DNA of 64,000 nucleotides from positions 62,001-126,000 of IMG/VR virus record IMGVR_UViG_3300006931_000029; one strand, written 5' to 3'. The notes beneath the pieces are model-generated. The model did not search any database. It was not told the DNA's origin and saw only the letters and a program-made list of their open reading frames with translations. Position numbers and translations under genes: made by a program. Below are positions 3,748 through 43,643 of the stretch, piece by piece (position 1 is the first letter of the stretch; each line of letters begins with the position of its first letter).

Positions 3748-4560
3748 GTGAAATCGTATCTAGGAACTTACGCCGGCATCGTCGAGTCCATCAAGGACCC
3801 GGAAAAACGTGGCCGAGTTAAAGTCAGAGTTCCAACAGTTTATGGACCCGCACAAGGTTCGATCCCGACGACGGACGTTCCATGGGCACTACCTGCTGGA
3901 TTACCTTCCGGCGGCACCAAAAACTCTGGCGGCATTGATTGGATGCCGGAAATTGGCGATCAGGTGTTGGTGCGTTTTCTTGATGGCGAACCAGAGAAAC
4001 CGGTGTGGGAATGGTTCATGCAGAATTCCGAGCAGGCGAAGCAATATCCGTTTCGCAACTACGAAGGAGACACGCCGAATCGCCATGCGCTGCTGACTCG
4101 CTACGGCCAATCGATCGAACTGGCCGAGTCCGGCATCACCGCTGTCACCAGCAAGGGTTACGTTATCCAAATTGTCGATGCTGGTGACGAGATGGACGGC
4201 TCGATTGAAGCTCGAACTGGCAAGGGCTACTTTGTGCAGATGATGGACGCGACTGACCAAATAGCCATCTTCGTGAAGTATGTCAATGCGAACTACGAGG
4301 ATTTGACCTTCATGGGGACAACGTCATTCTTCCAGATGGCTCAAAAATTCGAGATTCTAACACCTCGAACCAACGTCAAATCAGCTCGCATCGACCTTGG
4401 CGATGGGGCAGACGATCCGATCATCCGTAAGTCTGACCTGGAAAACGTTTGCAGTCAAATTGTTGCTTGGGCAAACTCGCACACCCACCCGAAAGTTCCG
4501 CCCACAAACACCCCGCTTAGAACCCGAGTGACGTTCAGCAGGGTGGTCTACGCCGTGTGA
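3748..4560 (+). CDS. baseplate spike / gp5-VgrG OB-fold protein (gpV-like)
   Basis: YAGIVESIKDPEKRGRVKVRVP, WALP, WMPEIGDQVLVRFLDGEPEKPVW and a C-terminal HTH (His-x-His) apex. GTG 3748 is preferred over the track start at 3562. Confidence 0.85.
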   Translation: MKSYLGTYAGIVESIKDPEKRGRVKVRVPTVYGPAQGSIPTTDVPWALPAGLPSGGTKNSGGIDWMPEIGDQVLVRFLDGEPEKPVWEWFMQNSEQAKQYPFRNYEGDTPNRHALLTRYGQSIELAESGITAVTSKGYVIQIVDAGDEMDGSIEARTGKGYFVQMMDATDQIAIFVKYVNANYEDLTFMGTTSFFQMAQKFEILTPRTNVKSARIDLGDGADDPIIRKSDLENVCSQIVAWANSHTHPKVPPTNTPLRTRVTFSRVVYAV

Positions 4561-29783: not shown

Positions 29784-31427
29784 TCAGTTGCGGGAAGCAA
29801 CCTGGCCTTGCGACAGGCGACGAGCCATACCCATGCTTTCTTGCACTGAGTGAGTCACGTCGGTCCTGAGAATCTCGACGCCTTCCGACATAGGACGGGC
29901 AGGCATCTTTGGGTCAACGGCAGCAGGCGCCGGTTTCACGTCGTCAGCAGGCTTTTTGGCCTCTTCAACGACGGGTTTCTTCGGCTCATCAGCGGCCGGT
30001 TTCTTCGCCTCGTCAACCACGGCAGCGGATTTGGCGTCAGCGGCGGCCTTGGCGTCAGCGGCAGGCTTTTTGGCCTCGTCGACGACGGGTTTGCCGTCGG
30101 CACCGACTCCGACTGCGGGCTTTTTCGCCTCGATCGACTCGCGAACAGCGAGGACAGCTTTCGGCGTCTTGGCGTCGACGAGAGCTTTCTTTTGGTCTTC
30201 CGTCATCGACGGGAATTCCAATTCGAGGACGCGAGCACCGAGCTCAGCGACATCCGCTTTGTAGCGGTTGGCCATGATGTCGAGAGCTTCCGTGCAGAAG
30301 CCGTACTTCTGCTCGAACACCTTCGAACCATCGCGTTCGCGACGGGCGGTTTCCATCCAGGCGCGACCGCGCTTGGCGACTGCTTCCGCGATTTCGTTGG
30401 ACTTAACCAACTTGCCGCGGCATTCGGAAAGAACCTTGCGGCTTTCCGAGACGACAGACGTCAGCTTCTTCACAACCGTGAGGAGCTTTGTCTGGTTTTC
30501 ACCGAGCTGCTTGACTTCTTTCCTCGGCGCGTCGAACGCTGCGGTCCAGCCTTCCTCGAGAGTCGTGAGTTCCTTGTGCAGCTGGCCAACTTCCCAAGAC
30601 GCGGAGGCGTTCTCGGAGAGATGCTTGGCAGCAGCGTTGTGGAGCTCAGTCATCCGTTGGAGACCTTCCGCAAACGTGCGGGCGTCGATGGTGGCCGTGT
30701 TAACGGCCTTCAAGGAGCTGATGCTTTCCCTGATTTGTTTGATGTCCATGACGACGTAGTTTTTGGTTTCTGCGATTGGCTTGACGCTCGAAGGCGCTGG
30801 GGCCGAAAGTGGGGTGGCTGTGGCAGCAGCGACCGGAGCGGGTTTGCTCTCAACAGTCTTTTCAGCACGCTGTGGTTTCAGCGCAGCCTGAACAAACGAA
30901 GGGGTAGAGACCACGTCCCAACCTTCGCAAACAAAATCCTCTTGGACGTCATCGACGCCATCCGAGGCAGTAACCAAAGAGCCGTAACCACGGCTCGAAA
31001 CTAGTGGGTCGTATCCTGCCTCAATCAGAGAGCTAAGCTTGTGACCCTCAGGCGTGTCGAGAACCTCGATACACCCTTTGACGTAAACGATCGGGCTATT
31101 CTTCTCGTCCTTGCCCTCGACCAACTGGGCATCAACCGTAATGTGACTGATCGGGCTGCGCAGGTCGACCTTACCATCAGCGGGGTGTTCCAGAAGTCCG
31201 AACGACGCCCGACGCGTCATCAATTGCTTGAGGACGGAACCTTCCGAGAGGTTCTTTTCCCAAACTTTCTTGGAATATCGGCGGCGATTGCCATTGATAC
31301 AGTCGCAAACCGACAGAGTTCCTGGAATACGCTTTGAGGTAAGTCCAGTCTCGGGGTTTTTCGACTCCACGATCGCTGCGCGATCAGGTTTGAAGTCGAA
31401 CGTGTCTTCGAGGAGAATGCGCGGCAC
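29784..31427 (-). CDS. prohead protease (gp21-like) fused to a coiled-coil scaffold
   Basis: INGNRRRYS, GLLEHP, ISH, EVLDTPEG, VSSRGYGS and WDVVSTPS motifs, followed by a long helical region and VxEAKKPAAD repeats. Confidence 0.88.
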   Translation of the reverse strand: MPRILLEDTFDFKPDRAAIVESKNPETGLTSKRIPGTLSVCDCINGNRRRYSKKVWEKNLSEGSVLKQLMTRRASFGLLEHPADGKVDLRSPISHITVDAQLVEGKDEKNSPIVYVKGCIEVLDTPEGHKLSSLIEAGYDPLVSSRGYGSLVTASDGVDDVQEDFVCEGWDVVSTPSFVQAALKPQRAEKTVESKPAPVAAATATPLSAPAPSSVKPIAETKNYVVMDIKQIRESISSLKAVNTATIDARTFAEGLQRMTELHNAAAKHLSENASASWEVGQLHKELTTLEEGWTAAFDAPRKEVKQLGENQTKLLTVVKKLTSVVSESRKVLSECRGKLVKSNEIAEAVAKRGRAWMETARRERDGSKVFEQKYGFCTEALDIMANRYKADVAELGARVLELEFPSMTEDQKKALVDAKTPKAVLAVRESIEAKKPAVGVGADGKPVVDEAKKPAADAKAAADAKSAAVVDEAKKPAADEPKKPVVEEAKKPADDVKPAPAAVDPKMPARPMSEGVEILRTDVTHSVQESMGMARRLSQGQVASRN

Positions 31428-34892: not shown

Positions 34893-35209
34893 GACGGCGG
34901 CGTCCTCACCCCAATTTGGTAACTCACGGCAAGCTTAGCAGCCGCTTCCGGCATCGTGTTGATTTCAGAGCGCGCCATGATAACGTGGTAGCAGCAACGA
35001 TAAACAAGAATGGCGATCCACACAGCAAGGACTAGCAAGACGCCAAGCATCACCATGACGAGATTCTGCCACGTTGGCGTGCCGAAAGCCCACCAGAAAA
35101 ACGTGGTGATAACCGTGGCGATGATCGAACCAGAGGCGAAGAAGTCAATCGGCCGAATGAAGCCGACTTGAAACAACGCTCTGGTCTGCTCGTCCAAGAG
35201 CGGTTTCAT
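34889..35209 (-). CDS. small membrane protein (2 TM)
   Basis: Two hydrophobic segments; holin-like size but no direct evidence of function. Confidence 0.55.
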   Translation of the reverse strand: MKPLLDEQTRALFQVGFIRPIDFFASGSIIATVITTFFWWAFGTPTWQNLVMVMLGVLLVLAVWIAILVYRCCYHVIMARSEINTMPEAAAKLAVSYQIGVRTPPS

Positions 35210-36696
35210 TCCTTGGTGAATGTCTCGTCGGCGTGCTGGTCGATAACCTTGACAGCTTCCTCGGCCACCATCTCAGGCGGCAAATAGAAGGAGCGCACCT
35301 TGCGAACGAGAATCTTCTTCAGCGCCTCACTCGGCTTGCAGAAACGAAGCTCGAATGGTTCGCCCTCTTTGCCGATATAGAAGACGCATTTCGCCTTGCC
35401 GTCTTTGTGGGAGTAGTAGACGTCGGAACCAAACTTGATTTGTTTGTAGTGGTCCCGAAGGTGGACAAGAAGAGCTTCGTCACGTTCTGTCGGCGTGAAT
35501 GGGCCGGATGAAGGGGCGGCGGGAGCTTTTTGCTGTTGTTCGGGAGTGGGCGGTGTGTCTGACGAGGAGGCTTTTGGCATGACAGGATCGGTTGAGGGTT
35601 GTTGATCTGTGAGAACAGGAGTCCTCACATTCCGAGAACCCAATAGCTTTGGGCTCAGGGTAATCTCGCCTAGGCCGTAGTTCATTGCCTCCGTCTGACA
35701 TGCGGTCTTGAGGCCGCAGGACATGCATGTGCGATGATTCCGCTGGAAAAGGACACCGAAGCAGGACAAGCGATCCCCTTCGATGACCGGCGGCTTGGCA
35801 CCGACAACAGTCAGAAGCTTCTCGACGTCGGTTGACACCTTCTCCAGCTGGTCACGAGAACAAATCGTAAAGAGCCGGGCAACGATGACCTTGTCGGTGG
35901 AGCGTGGAACCTGAACCCCGAAGATGTTTTCAAGCGTGGCGAGCGCCGAGTTGAAGCGCACATCCTCGGGTTTGTTGTTCATGATCTTCTCCATGTATTT
36001 CGTCTTGATTGATTGATGCACGGTAGCGAAGAGTTCCTGGTCGATACCAAGACCCTCTGCCATGTGCTGGTGGCTGAGTTTCACCGAAAGCGGCTCGTTC
36101 TTCTTTCTGCCACGCGTGGTGCCCAAGTACGAGAACATGTATGCTCCCGGGTTTGGGTCTGCGAGCTGAGCTAGGACGAGTAGTTCCAGCGGAGTGAGGA
36201 AGACTTTAAGATCGTCCAACAGCTCCTGATCAAAAGAACAAGACGTGGAATCCTCCTTGCCGGCAATCTGAAGGTGGATGTCTGGATCGTCGAGGCTGAC
36301 ATCCGGTTTGATATTGACGCTGGTCGGATCGTTACGATCTGGAGCCCTGTGGCCAGTCCGCTTGATCGTGAAACGATGACGTTGAACAATGCCACGAACG
36401 TGGTTGTTCATCGACGTCTTTGCGACCTTAAAAAATTCAACTCGATTTCTGGCTCTAGTGAGCCAACCTGCTTTTATTACGTCAACCACTTTCTTCAAGC
36501 ATTCGGCTCGAAGATCGCTGAAGTTGAGAGCGAAACAGCTGTTGTCCGTGTACATCGTAGCCACAGAGACAGCAACTTTCAGGAGGTCTTCCATCATATC
36601 CTCCAAGCGGAGGAGGGGTTGACCGATGGCCATAGCCAATCTTGAAGATTCGACTTCGGCCGTTCTTAGCAATAGCGTAGCATCATTGACGTCCAT
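35206..36696 (-). CDS. sigma70-like factor (region 2 + region 4) with extra Zn-finger and C-terminal domains
   Basis: DLRAECLKKVV..EFFKVAKTSMNNHVRGIVQRHR resembles region 2, and LLDDLKVFLTPLELLVL..SHQHMAEGLGIDQE resembles the region 4 HTH. Start MDVND preferred. Confidence 0.6.
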   Translation of the reverse strand: MDVNDATLLLRTAEVESSRLAMAIGQPLLRLEDMMEDLLKVAVSVATMYTDNSCFALNFSDLRAECLKKVVDVIKAGWLTRARNRVEFFKVAKTSMNNHVRGIVQRHRFTIKRTGHRAPDRNDPTSVNIKPDVSLDDPDIHLQIAGKEDSTSCSFDQELLDDLKVFLTPLELLVLAQLADPNPGAYMFSYLGTTRGRKKNEPLSVKLSHQHMAEGLGIDQELFATVHQSIKTKYMEKIMNNKPEDVRFNSALATLENIFGVQVPRSTDKVIVARLFTICSRDQLEKVSTDVEKLLTVVGAKPPVIEGDRLSCFGVLFQRNHRTCMSCGLKTACQTEAMNYGLGEITLSPKLLGSRNVRTPVLTDQQPSTDPVMPKASSSDTPPTPEQQQKAPAAPSSGPFTPTERDEALLVHLRDHYKQIKFGSDVYYSHKDGKAKCVFYIGKEGEPFELRFCKPSEALKKILVRKVRSFYLPPEMVAEEAVKVIDQHADETFTKE

Positions 36697-36775
36697 GTGT
36701 TCCAGAGGGGGTTGACAGAGTTGACAGAAGCAGGAGACAGAAAAACTAGACAGAGAGGTGCGACCGAAGGAGAAC

Positions 36776-37792
36776 TTACTCGTGCTCTCCGAAGACTTCA
36801 TGCTCTCCTGATCGCCGCGAGTCGACCGTGGTTCGCATTTCGTCCCAAACTTCTTGAGCGCTCTTCGTTGTGCGCCCGCGTCGCTTCGCTACTTGCTCGA
36901 CAGAGGAAGGGTCCTTGTCCGATGCTTCAAGTTCGCGATAAAGGTCGTAGCTGTCACGCAGCTTTGCGAGACTCACTGGCGTTGGGATTTTGATCCGCTG
37001 CCCACCGAGTGTCATCACAATACGCTTGAATTGATCCCACGTGATGATGTCCAGAAGGTCTGGAATGTGGTCGTACGAGTGAGCGTGGCGGACGAGGTCC
37101 TGCTCAGTGAATGGCACGTGGACCATCTCAAGCATTTCGTTGCGCATCGCAAACAACGACCAGTTGTAGAAAAACTTCGATAGATCGATGCTGATCCCGT
37201 AGCTGTACGACGCAGAAAGGATCGCCCTTTTCTTGTCATGGGACTCCATCAAGATTGATTCAAGAAGGAAGCGTATGGCGCCGATTTCTTGTTTTGAACC
37301 CCATCGAACAGTGATGTGGTCCAACTTACCTCGGAACGAAACAGCCGCTTCGTGTTCAAAGGCACTATGATCCTCGACACCGTGATATTTTTCCAACGAT
37401 TCTCCGGTGGAATGAATTCTAGTGCGATAAGTGCTAACCTTAACGACTTCACCTCGGAAAACGTTTTTCGCGCACTTGGAGAACCAAGAGAAAAGCTTGC
37501 CCTTCTCAGGACGCCAAGCGATGAGCCATTTGACGATCTTCTCCTGTGCGGCCAAGACGAGTGTGTCGAGGTCGACCGTTGAGTCAAAGCCTTCGTACTG
37601 AGCAAACCGCTCGAACATCGGCGTCGAGCCTTTGACGATTTCGTCCAGCAGGTCAATAGCTTTCTCGTGCTCACCTGCTTCAGTCAGACGTTTCCATTCG
37701 ATTGCCATCCCCGTGAGTCGAGTCGCATTGAAAATGTGCTCGCCCTCTTTTGCGGGTTCTTCGGCTGGAAGGTCTGTCTTTTTCGCGGACAT
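36776..37792 (-). CDS. sigma region-2 (gp55-like) protein with a C-terminal Mor-like domain
   Basis: DTLVLAAQEKIVKWLIAWRPEKGKLFSWFSKCAKN resembles sigma2, and IVMTLGGQRIKIP..SVEQVAKRRGRTTKSAQEV resembles the Mor/C family. Confidence 0.65.
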   Translation of the reverse strand: MSAKKTDLPAEEPAKEGEHIFNATRLTGMAIEWKRLTEAGEHEKAIDLLDEIVKGSTPMFERFAQYEGFDSTVDLDTLVLAAQEKIVKWLIAWRPEKGKLFSWFSKCAKNVFRGEVVKVSTYRTRIHSTGESLEKYHGVEDHSAFEHEAAVSFRGKLDHITVRWGSKQEIGAIRFLLESILMESHDKKRAILSASYSYGISIDLSKFFYNWSLFAMRNEMLEMVHVPFTEQDLVRHAHSYDHIPDLLDIITWDQFKRIVMTLGGQRIKIPTPVSLAKLRDSYDLYRELEASDKDPSSVEQVAKRRGRTTKSAQEVWDEMRTTVDSRRSGEHEVFGEHE

Positions 37793-37863
37793 TTAGCGTA
37801 GGTTAGATACTTGAGGCAAAGTGGGTTGGGCAGGGAAAAGAATACTCTTCAAGGTTCTCTGGT

Positions 37864-37935
37864 TTACTATCCGGAGACTGGTAGAAATTACTACGGGGGT
37901 GATAGTATTTTTGACTACCCTTCCTCAGTAGTCTT
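37864..37935. repeat. three degenerate dyads at a 24-bp period in the longest intergenic gap
   Basis: ACTA at 37866, 37890 and 37914, each followed 9-12 nt later by TAG(T/A). Confidence 0.45.
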
Positions 37936-37999
37936 TTCTAACCGAAAAGAAACACAAAAAGGCGAACAAGATGTTTGCTCCCTATTTGCTGTGAGGAAT

Positions 38000-38622: not shown

Positions 38623-38651
38623 ATTTTAGGTTACGGATTGGAAATTGTAAA
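38623..38651 (-). promoter_or_regulatory. sigma70-like promoter
   Basis: TTTACA-N17-TAAAAT, 11 nt before the ATG. Confidence 0.65.
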
Positions 38652-38666
38652 CATTAAACGGTTTCG

Positions 38667-40010
38667 TTACTCGTCGTCGAGATCGATGTCGGCATCGTCA
38701 TCTTTCACGTCTTCGTCTCCTACGACGTTGTCGCTGAACATGATTTCTCGGGCCTTCAGCCAAAGCAAGTCGAGATCAGCTTGATGGTCTTTGTAGAAGT
38801 TAACCCATTCTTTCTTCGAAGGAAGTTCAGGATCGTTCGTTGCTTTGCCCCGATCGTCGTCTTCTTCCAAGCTGCGCCCAGCCGATTTCTTAGACGATGC
38901 TGGTTGAAACGTGCTGGTGGTGATGCCGAATTTGGCGAACTGCATCGTGAACCGCTTGGTCGACGGCGAGTATTTGGCGATGCCCAAGAAAATCATTGTC
39001 TCGAGCCGAGAGTAGAGATTGTTGAACCCACCCTCGAACAGGATAACGAGCCGACCCTCGCGAAGCGGCTTGATTTGCCGATTCTTCTGCGTGCGAAAGC
39101 CAATGAGATACCCTTGGGAGAACCTGGCGCCGCTCAGGCGATAGTTCTCGTTGAGCCTGAACATAAACACCCGCAGAGACGAATAGAACCGCAGAGCTTT
39201 GCCACCGAAGGTAGAATAGTCGTCGTTTTGCGGAGTGCTGTAGTGAACCTTCCGCTGGCCGGGAGCCGTCTGCTTGAACGCGTCACGGACCTGGTTAGTG
39301 CAAACCATCAGCACGTTGTGCCGGTTGATTTCACGCTGCATACGACGGAACCCTTCAGACAGCATCTTCGGTTGGCGCTGGAAGTCTTCCTTGTTCCACT
39401 CCTTGGTCATCTCCTGCTTTGAAGACGTGCCGGCGATAGTGTCGACCACCAGAACCACGAAGTACAGAATGGGCTCGCGTTTCTCGTCCTTTGCGGCCTT
39501 GTTTTCCTCCAACTGTTTTTCCTTGATCTTCTCGATGACAATGTCCGACATCTTGAAAATCTGGTCGACGGTATCGCAACGAGCAATGATGCAATCAAGC
39601 GTCACTCCTTCGATGATGATCTTTTCATCTTCGTCTACCGATTGCTCGTTGTCAATGAAGACTGTGGTCACGGCAATCTTGGCCGGATCAATTTTCGTCA
39701 GCGACATCACGCCGCCGACCACTGACCGTCGGTAGATTTCTCCGATTTGTGCCTTGATCAGAGAGCGGATGCAGAGAGCGCTTTTGCCGCACGCCTCAAG
39801 CCCGTAAAGCTCAACGATTCGTCCGAAAGGAAGACCGCCGCACGCCTCATCCATCGGATCAAGCCCAGTTTTGAGGACGTACTCAACCTTGGACAGGATG
39901 TCCTCAGTCGAAAGGGCAACGTCAAACGTACCCTCTTCGTTTGAATCCTTCGGGCGTTGGCGCTTTAGTTGGCGCGCGACGATCTGATTAAGGTTGGGAA
40001 TTTCGCTCAT
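38667..40010 (-). CDS. recA: RecA/UvsX recombinase
   Basis: TGLDPMD..GGLPFGRIVELYGLEACGKS, VVDTIAG, TNQVR and GGKALRFYSSLR motifs. Confidence 0.92.
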   Translation of the reverse strand: MSEIPNLNQIVARQLKRQRPKDSNEEGTFDVALSTEDILSKVEYVLKTGLDPMDEACGGLPFGRIVELYGLEACGKSALCIRSLIKAQIGEIYRRSVVGGVMSLTKIDPAKIAVTTVFIDNEQSVDEDEKIIIEGVTLDCIIARCDTVDQIFKMSDIVIEKIKEKQLEENKAAKDEKREPILYFVVLVVDTIAGTSSKQEMTKEWNKEDFQRQPKMLSEGFRRMQREINRHNVLMVCTNQVRDAFKQTAPGQRKVHYSTPQNDDYSTFGGKALRFYSSLRVFMFRLNENYRLSGARFSQGYLIGFRTQKNRQIKPLREGRLVILFEGGFNNLYSRLETMIFLGIAKYSPSTKRFTMQFAKFGITTSTFQPASSKKSAGRSLEEDDDRGKATNDPELPSKKEWVNFYKDHQADLDLLWLKAREIMFSDNVVGDEDVKDDDADIDLDDE

Positions 40011-41665
40011 TTGGCTGAATCGTGCTTCTTGACCCGGTCACGGATGCTGCTGGTAAGTGAGGATGCGCGAGTTGCTGGCTGATCATTCTTCGGTTGATCC
40101 GAAGCAGGAGCAACTTCGCCGGCGGTCGGTGCAGACGCTGGAGCTTTATCCTTGTCGTCATCCGGCAGATCGTCTTCCTCTTCCTTGTCCTCACGGCCCG
40201 CGGACGGACGTGGCGAACCAGTCACAGCGGCTGGAGGAGGGACAATCTGACGAGAACCAGAGACGTTACGAGACATCGCCGGTGGATCATCGGTGTCTTC
40301 ACGACGACCGCGTGGCTCATCTTCCTCATCAACGTCCCGAGCGCGACCACGTGGTTCTGCTTCTTCGAGATCAGGATGACGATCGGCGTCTGCAGGACGA
40401 GATGTAGCTGAGGAGCGTCTGTCGTCCGAACGGCGATCGTCTCCACCGCCAGTCGAGGTGCCACGGCGGTCGTCAGACCGACCACGGTCTTCATCTCGAG
40501 GAGCTGAGCGGCGGTCATCTGAGCGGGGTTCAGAACGACGCTCGTCGCGTACGTCACTCTTTGGAGAGTCAGAACGGGCTCGGTCGTCTGAACGACGATC
40601 ATCCGAGCGTCGGTCGTCTGAACGGCTGTCACCACGGTCGTCTCTGGATGAAGAGGATGAACGGCGATCGTCTCCATCATCGCGTGAGCGCGAACTTCCA
40701 CGATCGTCCGAGCGGCTGTCACCGCGGTCGTCTCGACCTCGGCTGCTGCTTTCTTCAGCGCGACCACCGCGATCATCGTCTCGTGACCGAGAAGACGAAC
40801 GATCGTCTCCATCATCGCGTGAACGTGAACTTCCGCCACCTCGGCGGTCATCCGAACGGCTGTCACCACGGTCGTCTCGGGAGCCACCGCCACCTCGGCG
40901 ATCGTCGTCCCGTCCGCCAGAAGGCCGACGGTCGAAACACAGGTCTTCGATCTTCAGGAGAATGTCGTCCAAGTCATCTCCTTCGACTGGGGCGTCCGCC
41001 TTCCAGGTAATGGACTTCAATACTTCTGCCAGGAATTCGTCCGGGTTGGCGCTCTTCGGTGCCAATGGGAGCGGGTCTTCGCGATCAAACCGAAGTCCAC
41101 GACGGCTCTTGCTCATCATCAAATCGCAACCCTTGATGGGGTCGACGATGCTGAGCTTTGACTCTGTGCGGCGAAGAAACGTCTTGAAGATCGTCATCAC
41201 GTCTTGAAACGCTTCCTTGTACAGCCAAAGCTCTTTGGCTTTCTTCAACTCGTTGCCGCGGTACTTCGTGACCTGACCGCTAGCCGACTGATATTCAATC
41301 GGCACGGCCATAACCAAATACTGCGGAACCGCAGTCATGCGGTACGCGGCAGACGACACCGCCTTGTTCCGGTCTCGATTCAGCTTGTCGATCGTATCGC
41401 ACATGGCACACTTGCCATCAGGATCGCCGCCGTGGGCAACGTCTGTGTCGCGCGTGCAAAGGTAAGGGCGTTGACCAACCCAGTGACGAGCAACGCGAGC
41501 AAACCACTTGCCGCGATCATCGAAGATGTAGGGGACGATGCGAAGCAACATCGACTCGCCGGGCTCTTTGAGAGCGATGCGATCGTTGCCACGACGGCCT
41601 TTTTGGTTGAGAAATTCCGTCTCTTTTTCGAGCTCGGCCAAGTAATCGGGATCAGTGTGCGACAT
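40007..41665 (-). CDS. gp32-like single-stranded DNA-binding protein with a long Arg/Asp/Ser-rich disordered tail
   Basis: LLRIVPY, RHWVG..YLC..CAMCD core; position between UvsY-like and RecA genes; repeated RDDRGDSRSDDRR. Confidence 0.75.
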   Translation of the reverse strand: MSHTDPDYLAELEKETEFLNQKGRRGNDRIALKEPGESMLLRIVPYIFDDRGKWFARVARHWVGQRPYLCTRDTDVAHGGDPDGKCAMCDTIDKLNRDRNKAVSSAAYRMTAVPQYLVMAVPIEYQSASGQVTKYRGNELKKAKELWLYKEAFQDVMTIFKTFLRRTESKLSIVDPIKGCDLMMSKSRRGLRFDREDPLPLAPKSANPDEFLAEVLKSITWKADAPVEGDDLDDILLKIEDLCFDRRPSGGRDDDRRGGGGSRDDRGDSRSDDRRGGGSSRSRDDGDDRSSSRSRDDDRGGRAEESSSRGRDDRGDSRSDDRGSSRSRDDGDDRRSSSSSRDDRGDSRSDDRRSDDRRSDDRARSDSPKSDVRDERRSEPRSDDRRSAPRDEDRGRSDDRRGTSTGGGDDRRSDDRRSSATSRPADADRHPDLEEAEPRGRARDVDEEDEPRGRREDTDDPPAMSRNVSGSRQIVPPPAAVTGSPRPSAGREDKEEEDDLPDDDKDKAPASAPTAGEVAPASDQPKNDQPATRASSLTSSIRDRVKKHDSAK

Positions 41666-42233: not shown

Positions 42234-43643
42234 TCAAGGCTCGTCGCGTGACAGCTTTTCGAAGTCCGCGTCGCTGATACCTCTGCCTTTCTTGCGTGGC
42301 TTCTCCTTGGAATCACTCTTACCGCCGTCCTCTGGTTCGTACGGGATTTCTTCCCCTAAGTCGACAGTCATAGTTTCAGGATCGACCTTGCCTCTGAAGT
42401 GCTGAAACGCGGCGCCATGACGATTGACAAACACAAAGGTTCTGAAGATGTTTTCAGCATATTCGTCGTCAGTCATACAAAGACCAATAGCGACGTCGAC
42501 GATACCACCTTTCGCGAACGCTCCTTGAAACGCCTTCATGTTCGGCACGCGGTCGTTCGTCGCCTCTTTTGTCATACGGTCCGGCATGATGACGGGCACT
42601 CTGAATTCTGCTCCCAAGGCTCTGGCTTCAGTGTAGACACCAGCCTGGCGGAGATACTCTTTTTCGTAGTTGCCGGACGGCAAGACGGTGTCCGCGTAAT
42701 CGATGATGATCGCTCGCAGTTTCTTGAGACCGAACTGTTGAATAGCCAGTCTGGCGTGGTTGCGAATCGTGGTGATTGTAGCAGTTCCGGCAGGATACCC
42801 CTTGATGACTAAGTTTCCAGCCACCGACGTGACAACAGCCGTTTTGGTTAGCTCCTTGAACTTCTCTGGATTTTCGTAAAGGTAACTCATCCCTTTCTGG
42901 GTGATGTTCGTCATTCCACGAGCAAACGCCAGCTCTTGCGTGATTTCGCACGGGTAGTAGAGCACGTCGCCGCCCTGCATAGGGCTAATGATGTTCAGCG
43001 CGAGATTCATGCACACGGCCGTTTTGTAGCGCTTCGGAGGAGCCACGAGTGTCACCAGCCATCCAGGACCCCATCCTCGCTTCCAAATGCGATCCCACTG
43101 CGGGTAGCCTGTGAGAGTGCCGTAGTCGGCTTTCGTGATCTTGTCGATGACATGGGCGTAGTCCATGTGGAATACGAGTCCGAGGTCGTCTAGATTTTGG
43201 CCGACTTGAAGCGCGTCTTGAAACAACTTTACGAACCCGTCCTCTGGAGATTTCTTCTCTTTGATCAACTCAACGCACTTTTTGATCGCGTTGATCGTTG
43301 CGCGTTCTCTCGCAAAAGTTATGACTCTTGAGACAACAAACTCAGCATCCGACGTGTCGTGCTCCCTCAACTGGGTGATGTATTTGATGACTTCAGCGTC
43401 ATCAGCCAGCGACAACTTCTTGTTTTGGTCTAGGGCGAGTTGCTTCAGCGTCGCCCACGACGGAGGCTTGCCGTACTTTCTGACGTAGTCTAACAGCGCA
43501 TAAGCGATAACGGTAGCCTGTGCACCTTGAAAATAGCTAGGCTGCAGAATTTCGCCGTACGCCAGAAACTTATCTGGATGGGCGATGAAGTGAGATATGA
43601 TCGAATCTTGAAATTCGTCATCTAACGCAAAGTGATCGGGCAT
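42234..43643 (-). CDS. dnaB: replicative DnaB/gp41-like helicase
   Basis: VAPPKRYKT (variant Walker A), YYPCE, IKGYP, IIIDYAD and VDVAIGL motifs. Confidence 0.85.
   Translation of the reverse strand: MPDHFALDDEFQDSIISHFIAHPDKFLAYGEILQPSYFQGAQATVIAYALLDYVRKYGKPPSWATLKQLALDQNKKLSLADDAEVIKYITQLREHDTSDAEFVVSRVITFARERATINAIKKCVELIKEKKSPEDGFVKLFQDALQVGQNLDDLGLVFHMDYAHVIDKITKADYGTLTGYPQWDRIWKRGWGPGWLVTLVAPPKRYKTAVCMNLALNIISPMQGGDVLYYPCEITQELAFARGMTNITQKGMSYLYENPEKFKELTKTAVVTSVAGNLVIKGYPAGTATITTIRNHARLAIQQFGLKKLRAIIIDYADTVLPSGNYEKEYLRQAGVYTEARALGAEFRVPVIMPDRMTKEATNDRVPNMKAFQGAFAKGGIVDVAIGLCMTDDEYAENIFRTFVFVNRHGAAFQHFRGKVDPETMTVDLGEEIPYEPEDGGKSDSKEKPRKKGRGISDADFEKLSRDEP

What the first reader, a model, noticed from the sequence alone, without database searches (positions are those of the whole stretch)
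36776..37792. Sigma region 2 fused to a Mor/C-like activator domain instead of sigma region 4
Seen: the C-terminal about 90 aa (DIITWDQFKRIVMTLGGQRIKIP...YDLYREL...SVEQVAKRRGRTTKSAQEV) follows the phage Mu Mor/C pattern of a GG-x-x-I-x-IP turn followed by an HTH. Established: Mor is a stand-alone dimeric activator that binds dyads upstream of promoters. I do not know of a described sigma2-Mor fusion. Inference: this is a self-activating sigma that couples operator binding with -10 melting.
Basis: partly seen in the sequence, partly recalled or inferred. Interest (0 to 1): 0.65.

Follow-up and report, generated by a model that had tools for sequence, protein, structure and literature searches.

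The report
Phage sigma factor with fused Mor domain
A soil jumbo phage encodes a sigma-factor-like protein that carries, after its promoter-opening domain and a degenerate sigma-4-like domain, a complete copy of the phage Mu Mor/C activator fold, so two proteins that normally touch each other on RNA polymerase are here fused into one chain.

Summary
The ORF is real: 36776-37792, minus strand, 338 aa. It lies in a complete 225-kb phage genome from rhizosphere and soil metagenomes.

- N-terminus (about 20-125): sigma region 2. Sigma70_r2 matches 21 of 60 relatives (best 4.7e-9), and sigma-2 structures match at Z 9-10.7, T4 gp55 among them.
- C-terminus (about 229-326): a whole Mor/C-family domain. 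Pfam Mor matches 37 of 51 relatives (best 4.9e-8), PHROG 836 matches 47 of 60, and hhalign against Mu Mor gives E 5.5e-5. An Atlas Mor cluster aligns over 93 of its 94 residues (TM 0.68).

"Instead of region 4" does not hold. Residues about 146-222 form a four-helix domain that matches sigma region-4 structures in at least 13 of the top 50 rows (Z 5.2-7.0). This is by fold only, not by sequence. The architecture is therefore sigma2, linker, sigma4-like, Mor.

"Self-activating" is unsupported. The spacer holding the dyads is missing in close relatives, where the gene abuts the upstream gene behind a conserved host-type promoter.

The family has more than 250 clusters, no isolate-phage member and no matching paper. 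A roughly 495-aa partner gene follows it in 31 of 33 loci. I read it as a phage sigma for host RNA polymerase with a built-in activator module: a new variant of a known kind.

The parts
36776..37792 (-). Whole gene, 338 aa (P0001): sigma2, linker, sigma4-like domain and Mor/C-like domain
   Evidence: ORF list and translation. It is a single copy in the 224,954-bp phage genome.
37418..37735 (-). Residues about 20-125: sigma region-2 (sigma2) domain. FSWFSKCAKN corresponds to region 2.3.
   Evidence: Sigma70_r2 in 21 of 60 relatives, best 4.7e-9. The family profile against PDB finds almost only sigma region 2 (SigE 8b3z E 0.0046). hhalign against a FliA profile gives E 9.7e-5 over regions 2.1-2.3. 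VIA: T4 gp55 7d7d_F Z 10.7 over 111 aa, SigC 2o7g Z 9.7 with rmsd 2.4. PHROG 234 (gp55 family) in 14 of 60.
37472..37474 (-). Codon of invariant Cys107. In many relatives an intein sits immediately before it.
   Evidence: About 19 of 99 representatives match in two stretches that break at residue 105/106. The sequences show ...FSWFSK | intein ...HN | CAKN. Pfam finds LAGLIDADG_2 and Intein_splicing in the inserts.
37358..37417 (-). Residues about 126-145: low-confidence, poorly conserved linker
   Evidence: pLDDT below 50 for residues 123-145 in the full-length model, and variable in the alignment.
37127..37357 (-). Residues about 146-222: four-helix domain with a sigma region-4-like fold. Its last helix is aromatic (KFFYxW...R217).
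   Evidence: Model pLDDT 91.5. VIA hits sigma4 domains in at least 13 of the top 50 rows, Z 5.2-7.0. No sequence support: 0 of 60 members hit Pfam r3 or r4, and there is no PDB or FliA profile match.
36818..37081 (-). Residues about 238-325: Mor/C-family domain (short N-terminal helices, GG-x-R-x-K-x-P strand, helix-turn-helix)
   Evidence: Pfam Mor in 37 of 51, best 4.9e-8. PHROG 836 in 47 of 60, best 2e-10. hhalign against Mu Mor gives E 5.5e-5, in register. VIA: Mu C 9l0x_G Z 6.7 with rmsd 1.9 over 53 aa, and Mor 1rr7 with 81 of 94 residues aligned. An Atlas Mor cluster gives TM 0.68 over 93 of 94 aa.
36980..37006 (-). Residues 263-271, GGQRIKIPT: equivalent of the Mor/C beta-strand that enters the DNA major groove and touches sigma70 region 4
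   Evidence: Aligned to Mor GGGQVYIP and C GGRQFYIP. P270 is invariant, and G263, G264, R266 and K268 are conserved. The role of this strand in C is taken from preprint 10.1101/2025.05.02.651988.
36827..36910 (-). Residues 295-322: helix-turn-helix of the Mor-like domain
   Evidence: Helices 295-304 and 309-322 in both models. Aligned to the Mor and C HTH. Lost or degraded in some distant relatives.
38623..38651 (-). Sigma70-type promoter TTTACA-N17-TAAAAT in front of the upstream 203-aa gene. It is the likely source of the transcript in relatives.
   Evidence: Promoter scan. Member of a genome-wide TTGTTTACA promoter family of about 35 copies. Conserved at the same place in L009-L012.
37944..37983 (-). 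Terminator-like hairpin and T-run inside the 207-nt spacer (37793-37999) that is specific to this phage and its nearest kin
   Evidence: RNA fold of the spacer, z -2.2. The spacer is absent from L009, L011 and L012.
35206..36693 (-). Conserved downstream partner gene, about 495 aa from Met37 of the 531-aa ORF, with a C4 zinc motif. Function unknown.
   Evidence: 34% identical over its full length in a 240-kb relative. Relatives start at the internal Met. Present directly downstream in 31 of 33 related loci. No family assignment.

Best explanation
P0001 is a phage-encoded alternative sigma factor of the sigma70 superfamily. It is built as a gp55/ECF-like sigma2 domain, a flexible linker, a degenerate sigma4-like domain, and a complete Mor/C-type DNA-binding domain fused to the C-terminus.

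It is made together with the replication and recombination genes from a host-type promoter. It then binds the host (probably Opitutaceae) RNA polymerase core, since the phage shows no polymerase of its own, and redirects it to phage middle or late promoters.

Proposed division of labour:
- The sigma2 domain opens the -10 region.
- The sigma4-like domain keeps the scaffold and beta-flap position, but has an aromatic rather than polar 'recognition' helix.
- The Mor-like strand plus HTH supplies the upstream DNA contact in cis. This is the place where free Mor/C sits against sigma70 region 4 in phage Mu.
- The conserved downstream 495-aa zinc-motif protein is a likely co-factor.

Shown: the domain architecture, family conservation, synteny and upstream promoter. 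Inferred: core binding, DNA binding by the Mor module, target promoters and the partner's role.
For: Architecture:
- sigma2.
- sigma4-like fold in the correct order after a disordered linker.
- Mor/C domain.
- Whole-length Foldseek hits are all sigma factors, at prob up to 0.99 but E only 0.03-0.5.

DNA contacts. The residues aligned to C's DNA-contacting strand are basic or conserved (R266, K268, P270), and the recognition helix is polar. The roles of the C residues come from the preprint. In Mu, Mor/C contact the C-terminal helices of sigma70 region 4. Here the Mor-like domain follows directly after the sigma4-like domain.

Polymerase. No beta or beta' Pfam domain is found in the complete genome.

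Context. The gene sits between a T4-like replication module (gp32-like, RecA/UvsX, DnaB-like) and the head module (T4-type prohead protease at window 30867-31331). That is a usual place for a late regulator.

Selection. The family has more than 250 clusters at 90% identity and 99 at 50%. Inteins target its region-2.3 Cys, as they do essential proteins.

Possible targets. A -10-like GTTCT box without any -35 consensus lies 12-14 nt before 20 start codons against about 1 expected. This would suit a sigma without sequence-specific sigma4. The link to P0001 is inference only.
Against: - P0001 itself passes no Pfam threshold.
- The sigma4-like call rests on middling Z scores of 5-7 for a small helical domain and has no sequence support.
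- Foldseek E-values are all above 0.01.
- Mor/C act as dimers or tetramers, whereas a sigma is monomeric on the polymerase. The homodimer prediction gave no verdict.
- Some distant relatives lack the HTH but keep the GG..FP strand, so DNA reading by the HTH cannot be the universal function.
- The phage also has a canonical FliA-type sigma that could serve the GTTCT or other promoters.
- No upstream element common to candidate promoters was found.
- There are no expression data; all runs found are DNA.
Confidence: 0.55

Rival explanations
1. An ECF-like sigma whose Mor-like C-terminal extension is regulatory or protein-binding rather than DNA-reading. It might dock the 495-aa partner, an anti-sigma-like factor or the sigma's own domains, as the C-terminal extensions of some ECF groups do.
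For: The most conserved element is the helix plus GG..FP strand, not the HTH, and several distant relatives have a shortened or missing HTH. The partner gene is tightly linked in 31 of 33 loci. In Mu C the same strand also makes protein contacts with sigma70 region 4 and takes part in tetramerisation.
Against: In the close family the HTH and the basic strand residues are well conserved. The domain is a complete Mor fold, and every characterised member of that fold binds DNA.
Confidence: 0.2
2. Not an initiation factor. Instead, an RNA-polymerase-binding appropriator or inhibitor that uses a sigma2-like domain to occupy the beta' clamp helices and displace host sigma. The Mor-like domain would tether the polymerase to phage DNA or act as a conventional activator.
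For: Sequence similarity to sigma2 is weak for P0001 itself. The -10-reading aromatic positions differ from sigma70 (C107 aligns to the second aromatic position). The phage has another, canonical sigma.
Against: The same SRC/SKC motif occurs in bona fide sporulation sigmas (alignment to SigE 8b3z). The domain order matches complete sigma factors. gp55-family PHROG hits occur in 14 of 60 relatives.
Confidence: 0.12
3. One reading: sigma region 2 joined directly to a Mor/C domain that replaces sigma4, with the protein activating its own gene through the dyads at 37864-37935.
For: The sigma2 and Mor homologies are real. No sequence profile detects sigma4 anywhere in the protein. An 18-nt imperfect inverted repeat exists at 37882-37899 and 37923-37940.
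Against: A well-folded sigma4-like domain lies between the two. The repeat is only 78% complementary and is not part of the minimum-energy fold. The spacer holding it is absent from relatives that keep the gene. Those relatives have a host-type promoter upstream instead.
Confidence: 0.08

Closest known systems
Phage Mu Mor and C (Mor/C family, Pfam PF08765, PHROGs 532 and 836)
   Same: The C-terminal roughly 100 aa share the whole fold: short N-terminal helices, the GG-x-x-x-x-I-P strand and the HTH. Sequence-profile links support this. The strand residues that contact DNA in C are basic or conserved here.
   Different: Mor and C are free-standing proteins of about 130-140 aa. They act as dimers or tetramers and touch sigma70 region 4, alpha-CTD and the beta flap in trans. 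Here a single copy is fused behind a sigma body. P0001 itself is below the Pfam threshold, and oligomerisation is untested (one search gave no verdict).
T4 gp55 late sigma factor (PHROG 234), which works with gp33 and the gp45 clamp
   Same: Best-equal structural match of the N-domain (7d7d_F, Z 10.7, 111 aa). gp55-family PHROG hits occur in 14 of 60 relatives. The context is a T4-like replication and head module. Candidate promoters have a -10-like box only.
   Different: gp55 is 185 aa with no sigma4 and no DNA-binding C-domain, and its upstream function is supplied by gp33 and gp45. No gp45 clamp domain was found here. hhalign of the N-domain profile against gp55 alone is not significant.
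Group 4 (ECF) sigma factors, including those with C-terminal extensions
   Same: A two-domain sigma2-linker-sigma4 body of about 200 aa, with structural matches to SigW, SigL, SigK, sigmaE and CnrH for both domains. There is an extra C-terminal domain, as in some ECF groups (my own knowledge).
   Different: No Sigma70_r4_2 or ECF profile matches the middle domain. As far as I know, the known ECF extensions are regulatory domains, not Mor-type HTH domains.
SigI-type sigma factors (for example C. thermocellum SigI6, PDB 8i24)
   Same: A sigma2 domain (Z 9.2) combined with a non-canonical C-terminal DNA-reading domain. This is a precedent for -35 recognition by something other than standard sigma4 (my own knowledge of the family).
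   Different: The SigI C-domain is unrelated to Mor/C. Here a sigma4-like domain is retained in addition.
Sporulation sigma factors sigmaE and sigmaK of Bacillota
   Same: The region 2.2-2.3 motif (L/F)-x-(T/W)-(Y/F)-(A/S)-(S/K)-(R/K)-C-x-x-N aligns with the family's FSWFSKCAKN (SigE 8b3z, E 0.0046).
   Different: They have ordinary regions 3 and 4 and no Mor domain.

Membership tests
Sigma70 superfamily | Homologous region 2 (sigma2: core-binding 2.2 and -10 melting/recognition 2.3-2.4) | tested here: met
   Met at family level. Sigma70_r2 in 21 of 60 relatives, best 4.7e-9. The profile against PDB finds sigma region 2. hhalign against a FliA profile gives E 9.7e-5. VIA Z 9-10.7. P0001 alone has no Pfam hit.
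Sigma70 superfamily | Region 4 (sigma4) HTH that binds the beta flap and the -35 element | tested here: inconclusive
   The fold and position fit: sigma4 domains fill at least 13 of the top 50 VIA rows for residues 136-227, Z 5.2-7.0. Sequence does not support it: 0 of 60 hit Pfam r4 or r4_2, and there is no PDB or FliA profile match. The putative recognition helix is aromatic.
Sigma70 superfamily | Binds RNA polymerase core and confers promoter-specific initiation | not testable with these tools
   Needs biochemistry. The only indirect evidence is the absence of a phage RNA polymerase by Pfam.
Mor/C family (PF08765) | Match to the family HMM above the curated cut-off (24.9 bits) | tested here: not met
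   P0001 scores 12.8 bits (whole protein) and 15.9-16.3 bits (C-domain). Relatives do match: 37 of 51 at E up to 1, best 4.9e-8. PF08765 is also precomputed for P0077, P0087 and P0168. Homology is therefore inferred through the family.
Mor/C family (PF08765) | GG-x-x-x-(Y/h)-I-P linker strand followed by a C-terminal HTH | tested here: met
   LGGQRIKIPT plus helices 272-290, 295-304 and 309-322, aligned in register to Mor and C. An Atlas Mor cluster aligns over 93 of 94 aa, TM 0.68.
Mor/C family (PF08765) | N-terminal helices that form an intertwined dimer (a tetramer on DNA) | tested here: inconclusive
   Helices 230-262 align with Mor residues 27-65, but at rmsd 5.9 overall. The homodimer prediction scored 0.38 against a mark of 0.42, which is no verdict.
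Mor/C family (PF08765) | Free-standing small activator (about 90-140 aa) | tested here: not met
   The domain is the C-terminal third of a 338-aa protein in all full-length relatives.
T4 gp55 late sigma family (PHROG 234) | Profile match to the gp55 family | tested here: inconclusive
   14 of 60 relatives hit it, best 3.4e-4, but P0001 itself does not. T4 gp55 hits this PHROG at 2.9e-69. hhalign of the N-domain profile against gp55 gives E 0.035. The structure match is Z 10.7.

The most novel reading that the evidence does not exclude
A clade of roughly 200-240-kb soil and rhizosphere phages, probably infecting Verrucomicrobiota, uses a two-gene initiation system. One gene encodes a sigma whose sigma4 has lost DNA reading and has a Mor/C activator module fused to it in cis. 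This natural sigma-activator chimera reads upstream promoter DNA with a strand-plus-HTH device. It works with an obligatory 495-aa zinc-motif partner on promoters that have only a -10-like GTTCT box directly before leaderless genes.
Probability: 0.3. Interest if true: 0.75.

Novelty: new variant of a known kind. Interest (0 to 1): 0.62.

Why it matters
Sigma factors and class-II-type activators are normally separate proteins that meet on the polymerase. Recent cryo-EM work shows Mor and C pressing their linker strand against the C-terminal helices of sigma70 region 4. Here the same two modules are joined in one chain in that order.

- This is a natural "Rosetta-stone" fusion that supports that contact independently.
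- It offers a compact, single-protein way to re-target a bacterial RNA polymerase.
- It gives a testable case of how promoter upstream recognition can move from sigma4 to another domain, alongside T4 gp55/gp33 and SigI.
- It assigns a likely function to a large family of metagenomic "hypothetical proteins" in uncultured jumbo phages.
- It flags a conserved partner gene and an intein hotspot in sigma region 2.3.

Tried and rejected
- Full-length family profile against PDB sequences: no hit. Only the separate domains gave signal.
- C-domain profile against PDB: Mor only at E 1.7, among designed helical proteins. I did not use this as evidence.
- hhalign of the N-, middle and C-domain profiles against the phage's own FliA as a single sequence. 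Even the sigma2 positive control failed, so those negatives mean nothing. I repeated the test with a 26-sequence FliA profile.
- Middle domain against Pfam and PDB profiles: nothing.
- Homodimer prediction for the Mor-like domain: no verdict (0.38 against 0.42). This is not evidence either way.
- Isolate phage genomes (INPHARED) by tblastn: no relative.
- Paper searches for a sigma-Mor fusion: nothing relevant beyond the Mu Mor/C work.
- Search for an upstream element shared by the GTTCT sites: none. GTCTGRC shows only 10 sites against 3.5 expected. The tandem TCTGTCAAC is local, not genome-wide.
- Partner protein against Pfam, PDB, PHROGs and the Atlas: only faint sigma leads, so I make no claim about it.
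- Sequencing-run search: DNA metagenomes only and no RNA.
I rejected it as an operator.
Full report
**The object.** The window is bases 62001-126000 of a 224,954-bp IMG/VR virus record with direct terminal repeats, estimated complete. Near-identical DNA occurs in rhizosphere and soil metagenomes, and no RNA run holds it.

The gene is single-copy in the genome. It lies on the same strand as a T4-like replication and recombination block upstream: a DnaB-like helicase, a gp32-like single-strand-binding protein with a long low-complexity tail (my reading of the sequence), a RecA/UvsX-like recombinase, and a 203-aa unknown. Downstream lies a head block with a T4-type prohead protease (PF03420) at window 30867-31331.

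**Checking the observation on the protein alone.** Pfam gives only a sub-threshold Mor match: E 0.12 for the whole protein and 0.013-0.01 for the C-terminal part, 12.8-16.3 bits against a cut-off of 24.9. No sigma match appears. PHROGs gives family 836, "late transcriptional activator", at E 3.9e-4 for the C-terminal part.

**The family.** The word-indexed search found 250 clusters at 90% identity, nearly all about 335 aa and nearly all unnamed. The exhaustive search of 50% representatives found 99, reaching about 20% identity. I aligned 23 and then 60 full-length members (A1, A2) and cut the alignment into three blocks.

**N-terminal block (residues 18-130).**
- Sigma70_r2 matches 21 of 60 members, best 4.7e-9.
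- The block's profile against all PDB sequences returns almost only sigma region-2 chains: SigE 8b3z at E 0.0046, then sigH, sigmaE, SigW, RpoS and FliA.
- In those alignments the family's FSWFSKCAKN lines up with YASRCIENE of region 2.3.
- Profile-profile comparison with a 26-sequence FliA alignment gives E 9.7e-5 across regions 2.1-2.3.
- The AlphaFold model (pLDDT 74.5) matches sigma2 structures at Z 9-10.7: T4 gp55 in 7d7d over 111 residues, and SigC 2o7g at rmsd 2.4 A over 88.
- All top Foldseek rows are sigma factors, though with E of only 0.03-0.5.
- Fourteen of 60 members also hit PHROG 234, which T4 gp55 itself hits at 2.9e-69.

The sigma region-2 call is therefore supported by sequence and by structure.

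**C-terminal block (residues 229-330).**
- Pfam Mor matches 37 of 51 members, best 4.9e-8, and no member matches any sigma region-4 model.
- PHROG 836 matches 47 of 60 full-length members, best 2e-10. Mu Mor and C hit that PHROG at 1.2e-10 and 2.1e-11.
- The block's profile aligns to Mu Mor (taken from AF083977) at E 5.5e-5, probability 66%. GGQRIKIP lies over GGGQVYIP and the helix-turn-helix is in register. The alignment to C is in the same register at E 0.014.
- A second model of residues 136-338, built with 60 sequences, has pLDDT 91.5.
- Its C-domain matches Mu C in the cryo-EM activation complex (9l0x_G, Z 6.7, rmsd 1.9 A over 53 residues) and the Mor crystal structure with 81 of 94 residues aligned.
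- In the ESM Atlas the best shape matches are two Mor-family clusters. One aligns over 93 of its 94 residues, at TM 0.68 and rmsd 2.9 A.

So the last hundred residues are a whole Mor-family domain, not just an HTH.

**The middle block changes the reading.** Residues about 146-222 follow a roughly 20-residue low-confidence linker and form four helices. In the high-confidence model, this block's best match is the C-terminal domain of sigma-H (3mzy, Z 7.0, rmsd 2.7 A over 74 residues). At least twelve more of the top 50 rows are region-4 domains of different sigma groups:
- SigW 124-187
- SigL 103-177
- SigA region 4 (6ono)
- sigma32 208-284
- sigmaB 183-256
- HrdB
- Taq sigmaA
- sigmaE region 4 on -35 DNA (2h27)
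- SigK

With the full-length model, several complete sigma factors aligned to residues 1-225 only: sigmaS, WhiG and an ECF sigma.

These Z values are middling for a small helical domain, and no sequence method supports the call. Zero of 60 members hit Pfam r3 or r4, the PDB profile search found nothing, and the FliA profile gave no match. The helix in the "recognition" position is aromatic (invariant F207, F208, Y209 and W211; R217), unlike DNA-reading helices.

My reading is that the protein keeps a sigma4-like scaffold in the right place, probably no longer sequence-reading, and that the Mor-like domain is added after it. It may be partly right as function.

**How it probably works.** The complete genome shows no beta or beta' polymerase domain. 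Very divergent phage polymerases could escape Pfam. On present evidence, though, the protein must act on the host enzyme.

The phage also carries a canonical FliA/WhiG-type sigma that is 55-58% identical to Opitutaceae proteins. This points to a verrucomicrobial host.

In phage Mu, Mor and C bind just upstream of a poor -35 region. They put the linker strand and the HTH into the major groove, and they touch the C-terminal helices of sigma70 region 4, alpha-CTD and the flap tip (preprint 10.1101/2025.05.02.651988). In P0001 the Mor-like domain is attached directly to the C-terminal end of the sigma4-like domain. The strand positions aligned to C's DNA-contacting residues are R266, K268 and the invariant P270.

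The simplest mechanism is a sigma with a built-in class-II-type activator:
- sigma2 binds the clamp helices and melts the -10 region;
- the sigma4-like domain holds the flap;
- the Mor-like module reads or grips upstream DNA in cis.

All of these steps are inference.

**Points against, or unresolved.**
- Mor/C work as dimers or tetramers. The homodimer prediction gave no verdict.
- Some distant relatives keep the GG..FP strand but lose the HTH.

The comparative data weigh more. The 207-nt spacer between the 203-aa gene and P0001 is absent from close relatives. In L009 and L011 the two genes abut, in L012 they overlap by 4 nt, and in L010 they are 63 nt apart. All of these relatives, and this phage, have a TTGTTTACA-N17-TAnnnT promoter in front of the 203-aa gene.

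That promoter belongs to a family of about 35 copies in this genome, each placed so that the -10 box ends 6-7 nt before the start codon. That geometry implies leaderless, host-sigma-type transcription. So the gene is expressed with the replication block, not from its own operator. This phage's spacer also holds a terminator-like hairpin (37944-37983), whose meaning is open.

**Candidate targets.** GTTCT(t) begins 12-14 nt before 20 of 348 predicted start codons, against about one expected. This is the same geometry as the -10 boxes above, and there is no conserved -35-like element. Such -10-only promoters recall T4 late promoters. I could not link them to P0001 rather than to the FliA-type sigma.

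**Partner gene.** The next gene most likely starts at Met37 of the 531-aa ORF, at 36693. It encodes a conserved protein of about 495 aa with a C4 zinc motif. It follows the sigma gene in 31 of 33 related loci, down to 38% sigma identity. Only faint sigma-like leads were found for it. It is a likely co-factor of unknown role.

**Inteins.** About 19 of 99 representatives carry a LAGLIDADG or mini-intein inserted exactly between K106 and the invariant C107 of region 2.3. This is a mark of a conserved, important site.

**Novelty.** No isolate phage in INPHARED has a relative. In IMG/VR, 28 loci were found, on contigs up to 238 kb. The paper library gave no description of a sigma-Mor fusion. The closest precedents are T4 gp55 (sigma2 only, with upstream function supplied in trans), SigI (a non-sigma4 C-domain) and ECF sigmas with C-terminal extensions.

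I rate it a new variant of a known kind. I put confidence in the architecture at about 0.85 and confidence in the mechanism at about 0.5.

Noticed in passing
window 37472-37474 (Cys107 codon); relatives P0122, P0130, P0170: About 19 of 99 family representatives carry an intein, either LAGLIDADG-type or mini. It is inserted exactly between K106 and the invariant C107 of the sigma region-2.3 motif FSWFSK|CAKN.
   Followed up: yes
window 35206-36693 (-): A conserved partner gene of about 495 aa with an invariant C4 zinc motif and the motif RxEFFK..KT..NN...VQ.HRFT.KRTG. It lies directly downstream of the sigma gene in 31 of 33 related loci. It has no family assignment, only faint sigma-like leads. 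The 531-aa ORF call that overlaps P0001 is probably too long, since relatives start at Met37.
   Followed up: partly
G000:C1:199834-200742 (-), outside the window (locus L004): The phage also encodes a canonical FliA/WhiG-type sigma with regions 2, 3 and 4, 55-58% identical to Opitutaceae proteins. It looks host-derived and points to a verrucomicrobial host.
   Followed up: partly
genome-wide; in the window for example at 38623-38651, 28173, 47647, 60255 and 62164: About 35 copies of tTTTTTGTTTACA-N17-TAnnnT, with the -10 box ending 6-7 nt before the start codon. These look like sigma70-type promoters that would give leaderless mRNAs. The motif is conserved before the 203-aa gene in four relatives.
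   Followed up: partly
genome-wide; in the window for example before the starts at 43643, 26674, 22587, 17146, 6367 and 2950: GTTCT(t) begins 12-14 nt before 20 of 348 start codons, against about 1 expected. The geometry matches a -10 box, with no conserved -35-like element. This may be a second promoter class, and which sigma reads it is unknown.
   Followed up: partly
window 36709-36727 (-) and L010 about 4020-4050: A tandem direct repeat TCTGTCAAC (two copies) just upstream of the partner gene's start, in this phage and in one relative. It is not a genome-wide motif.
   Followed up: partly
window 37793-37999: A 207-nt spacer with a terminator-like hairpin and T-run (37944-37983) separates the 203-aa gene from the sigma gene. 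It occurs only in this phage and its nearest kin. In other relatives the two genes abut or overlap.
   Followed up: yes
window 40007-41665 (-): A 552-aa protein whose N-terminal part resembles the zinc-containing core of T4 gp32 (my reading of the sequence). It is followed by a low-complexity tail of about 300 aa rich in R, D, S and G. It has no Pfam or PHROG hit.
   Followed up: no
Atlas cluster, row 3: In one cluster of small bacterial Mor-family proteins, 63% of members also match Pfam Sigma70_r4. Mor-type and sigma4-type HTH profiles can therefore overlap, which matters when arguing 'Mor versus sigma4' from HMM hits alone.
   Followed up: no
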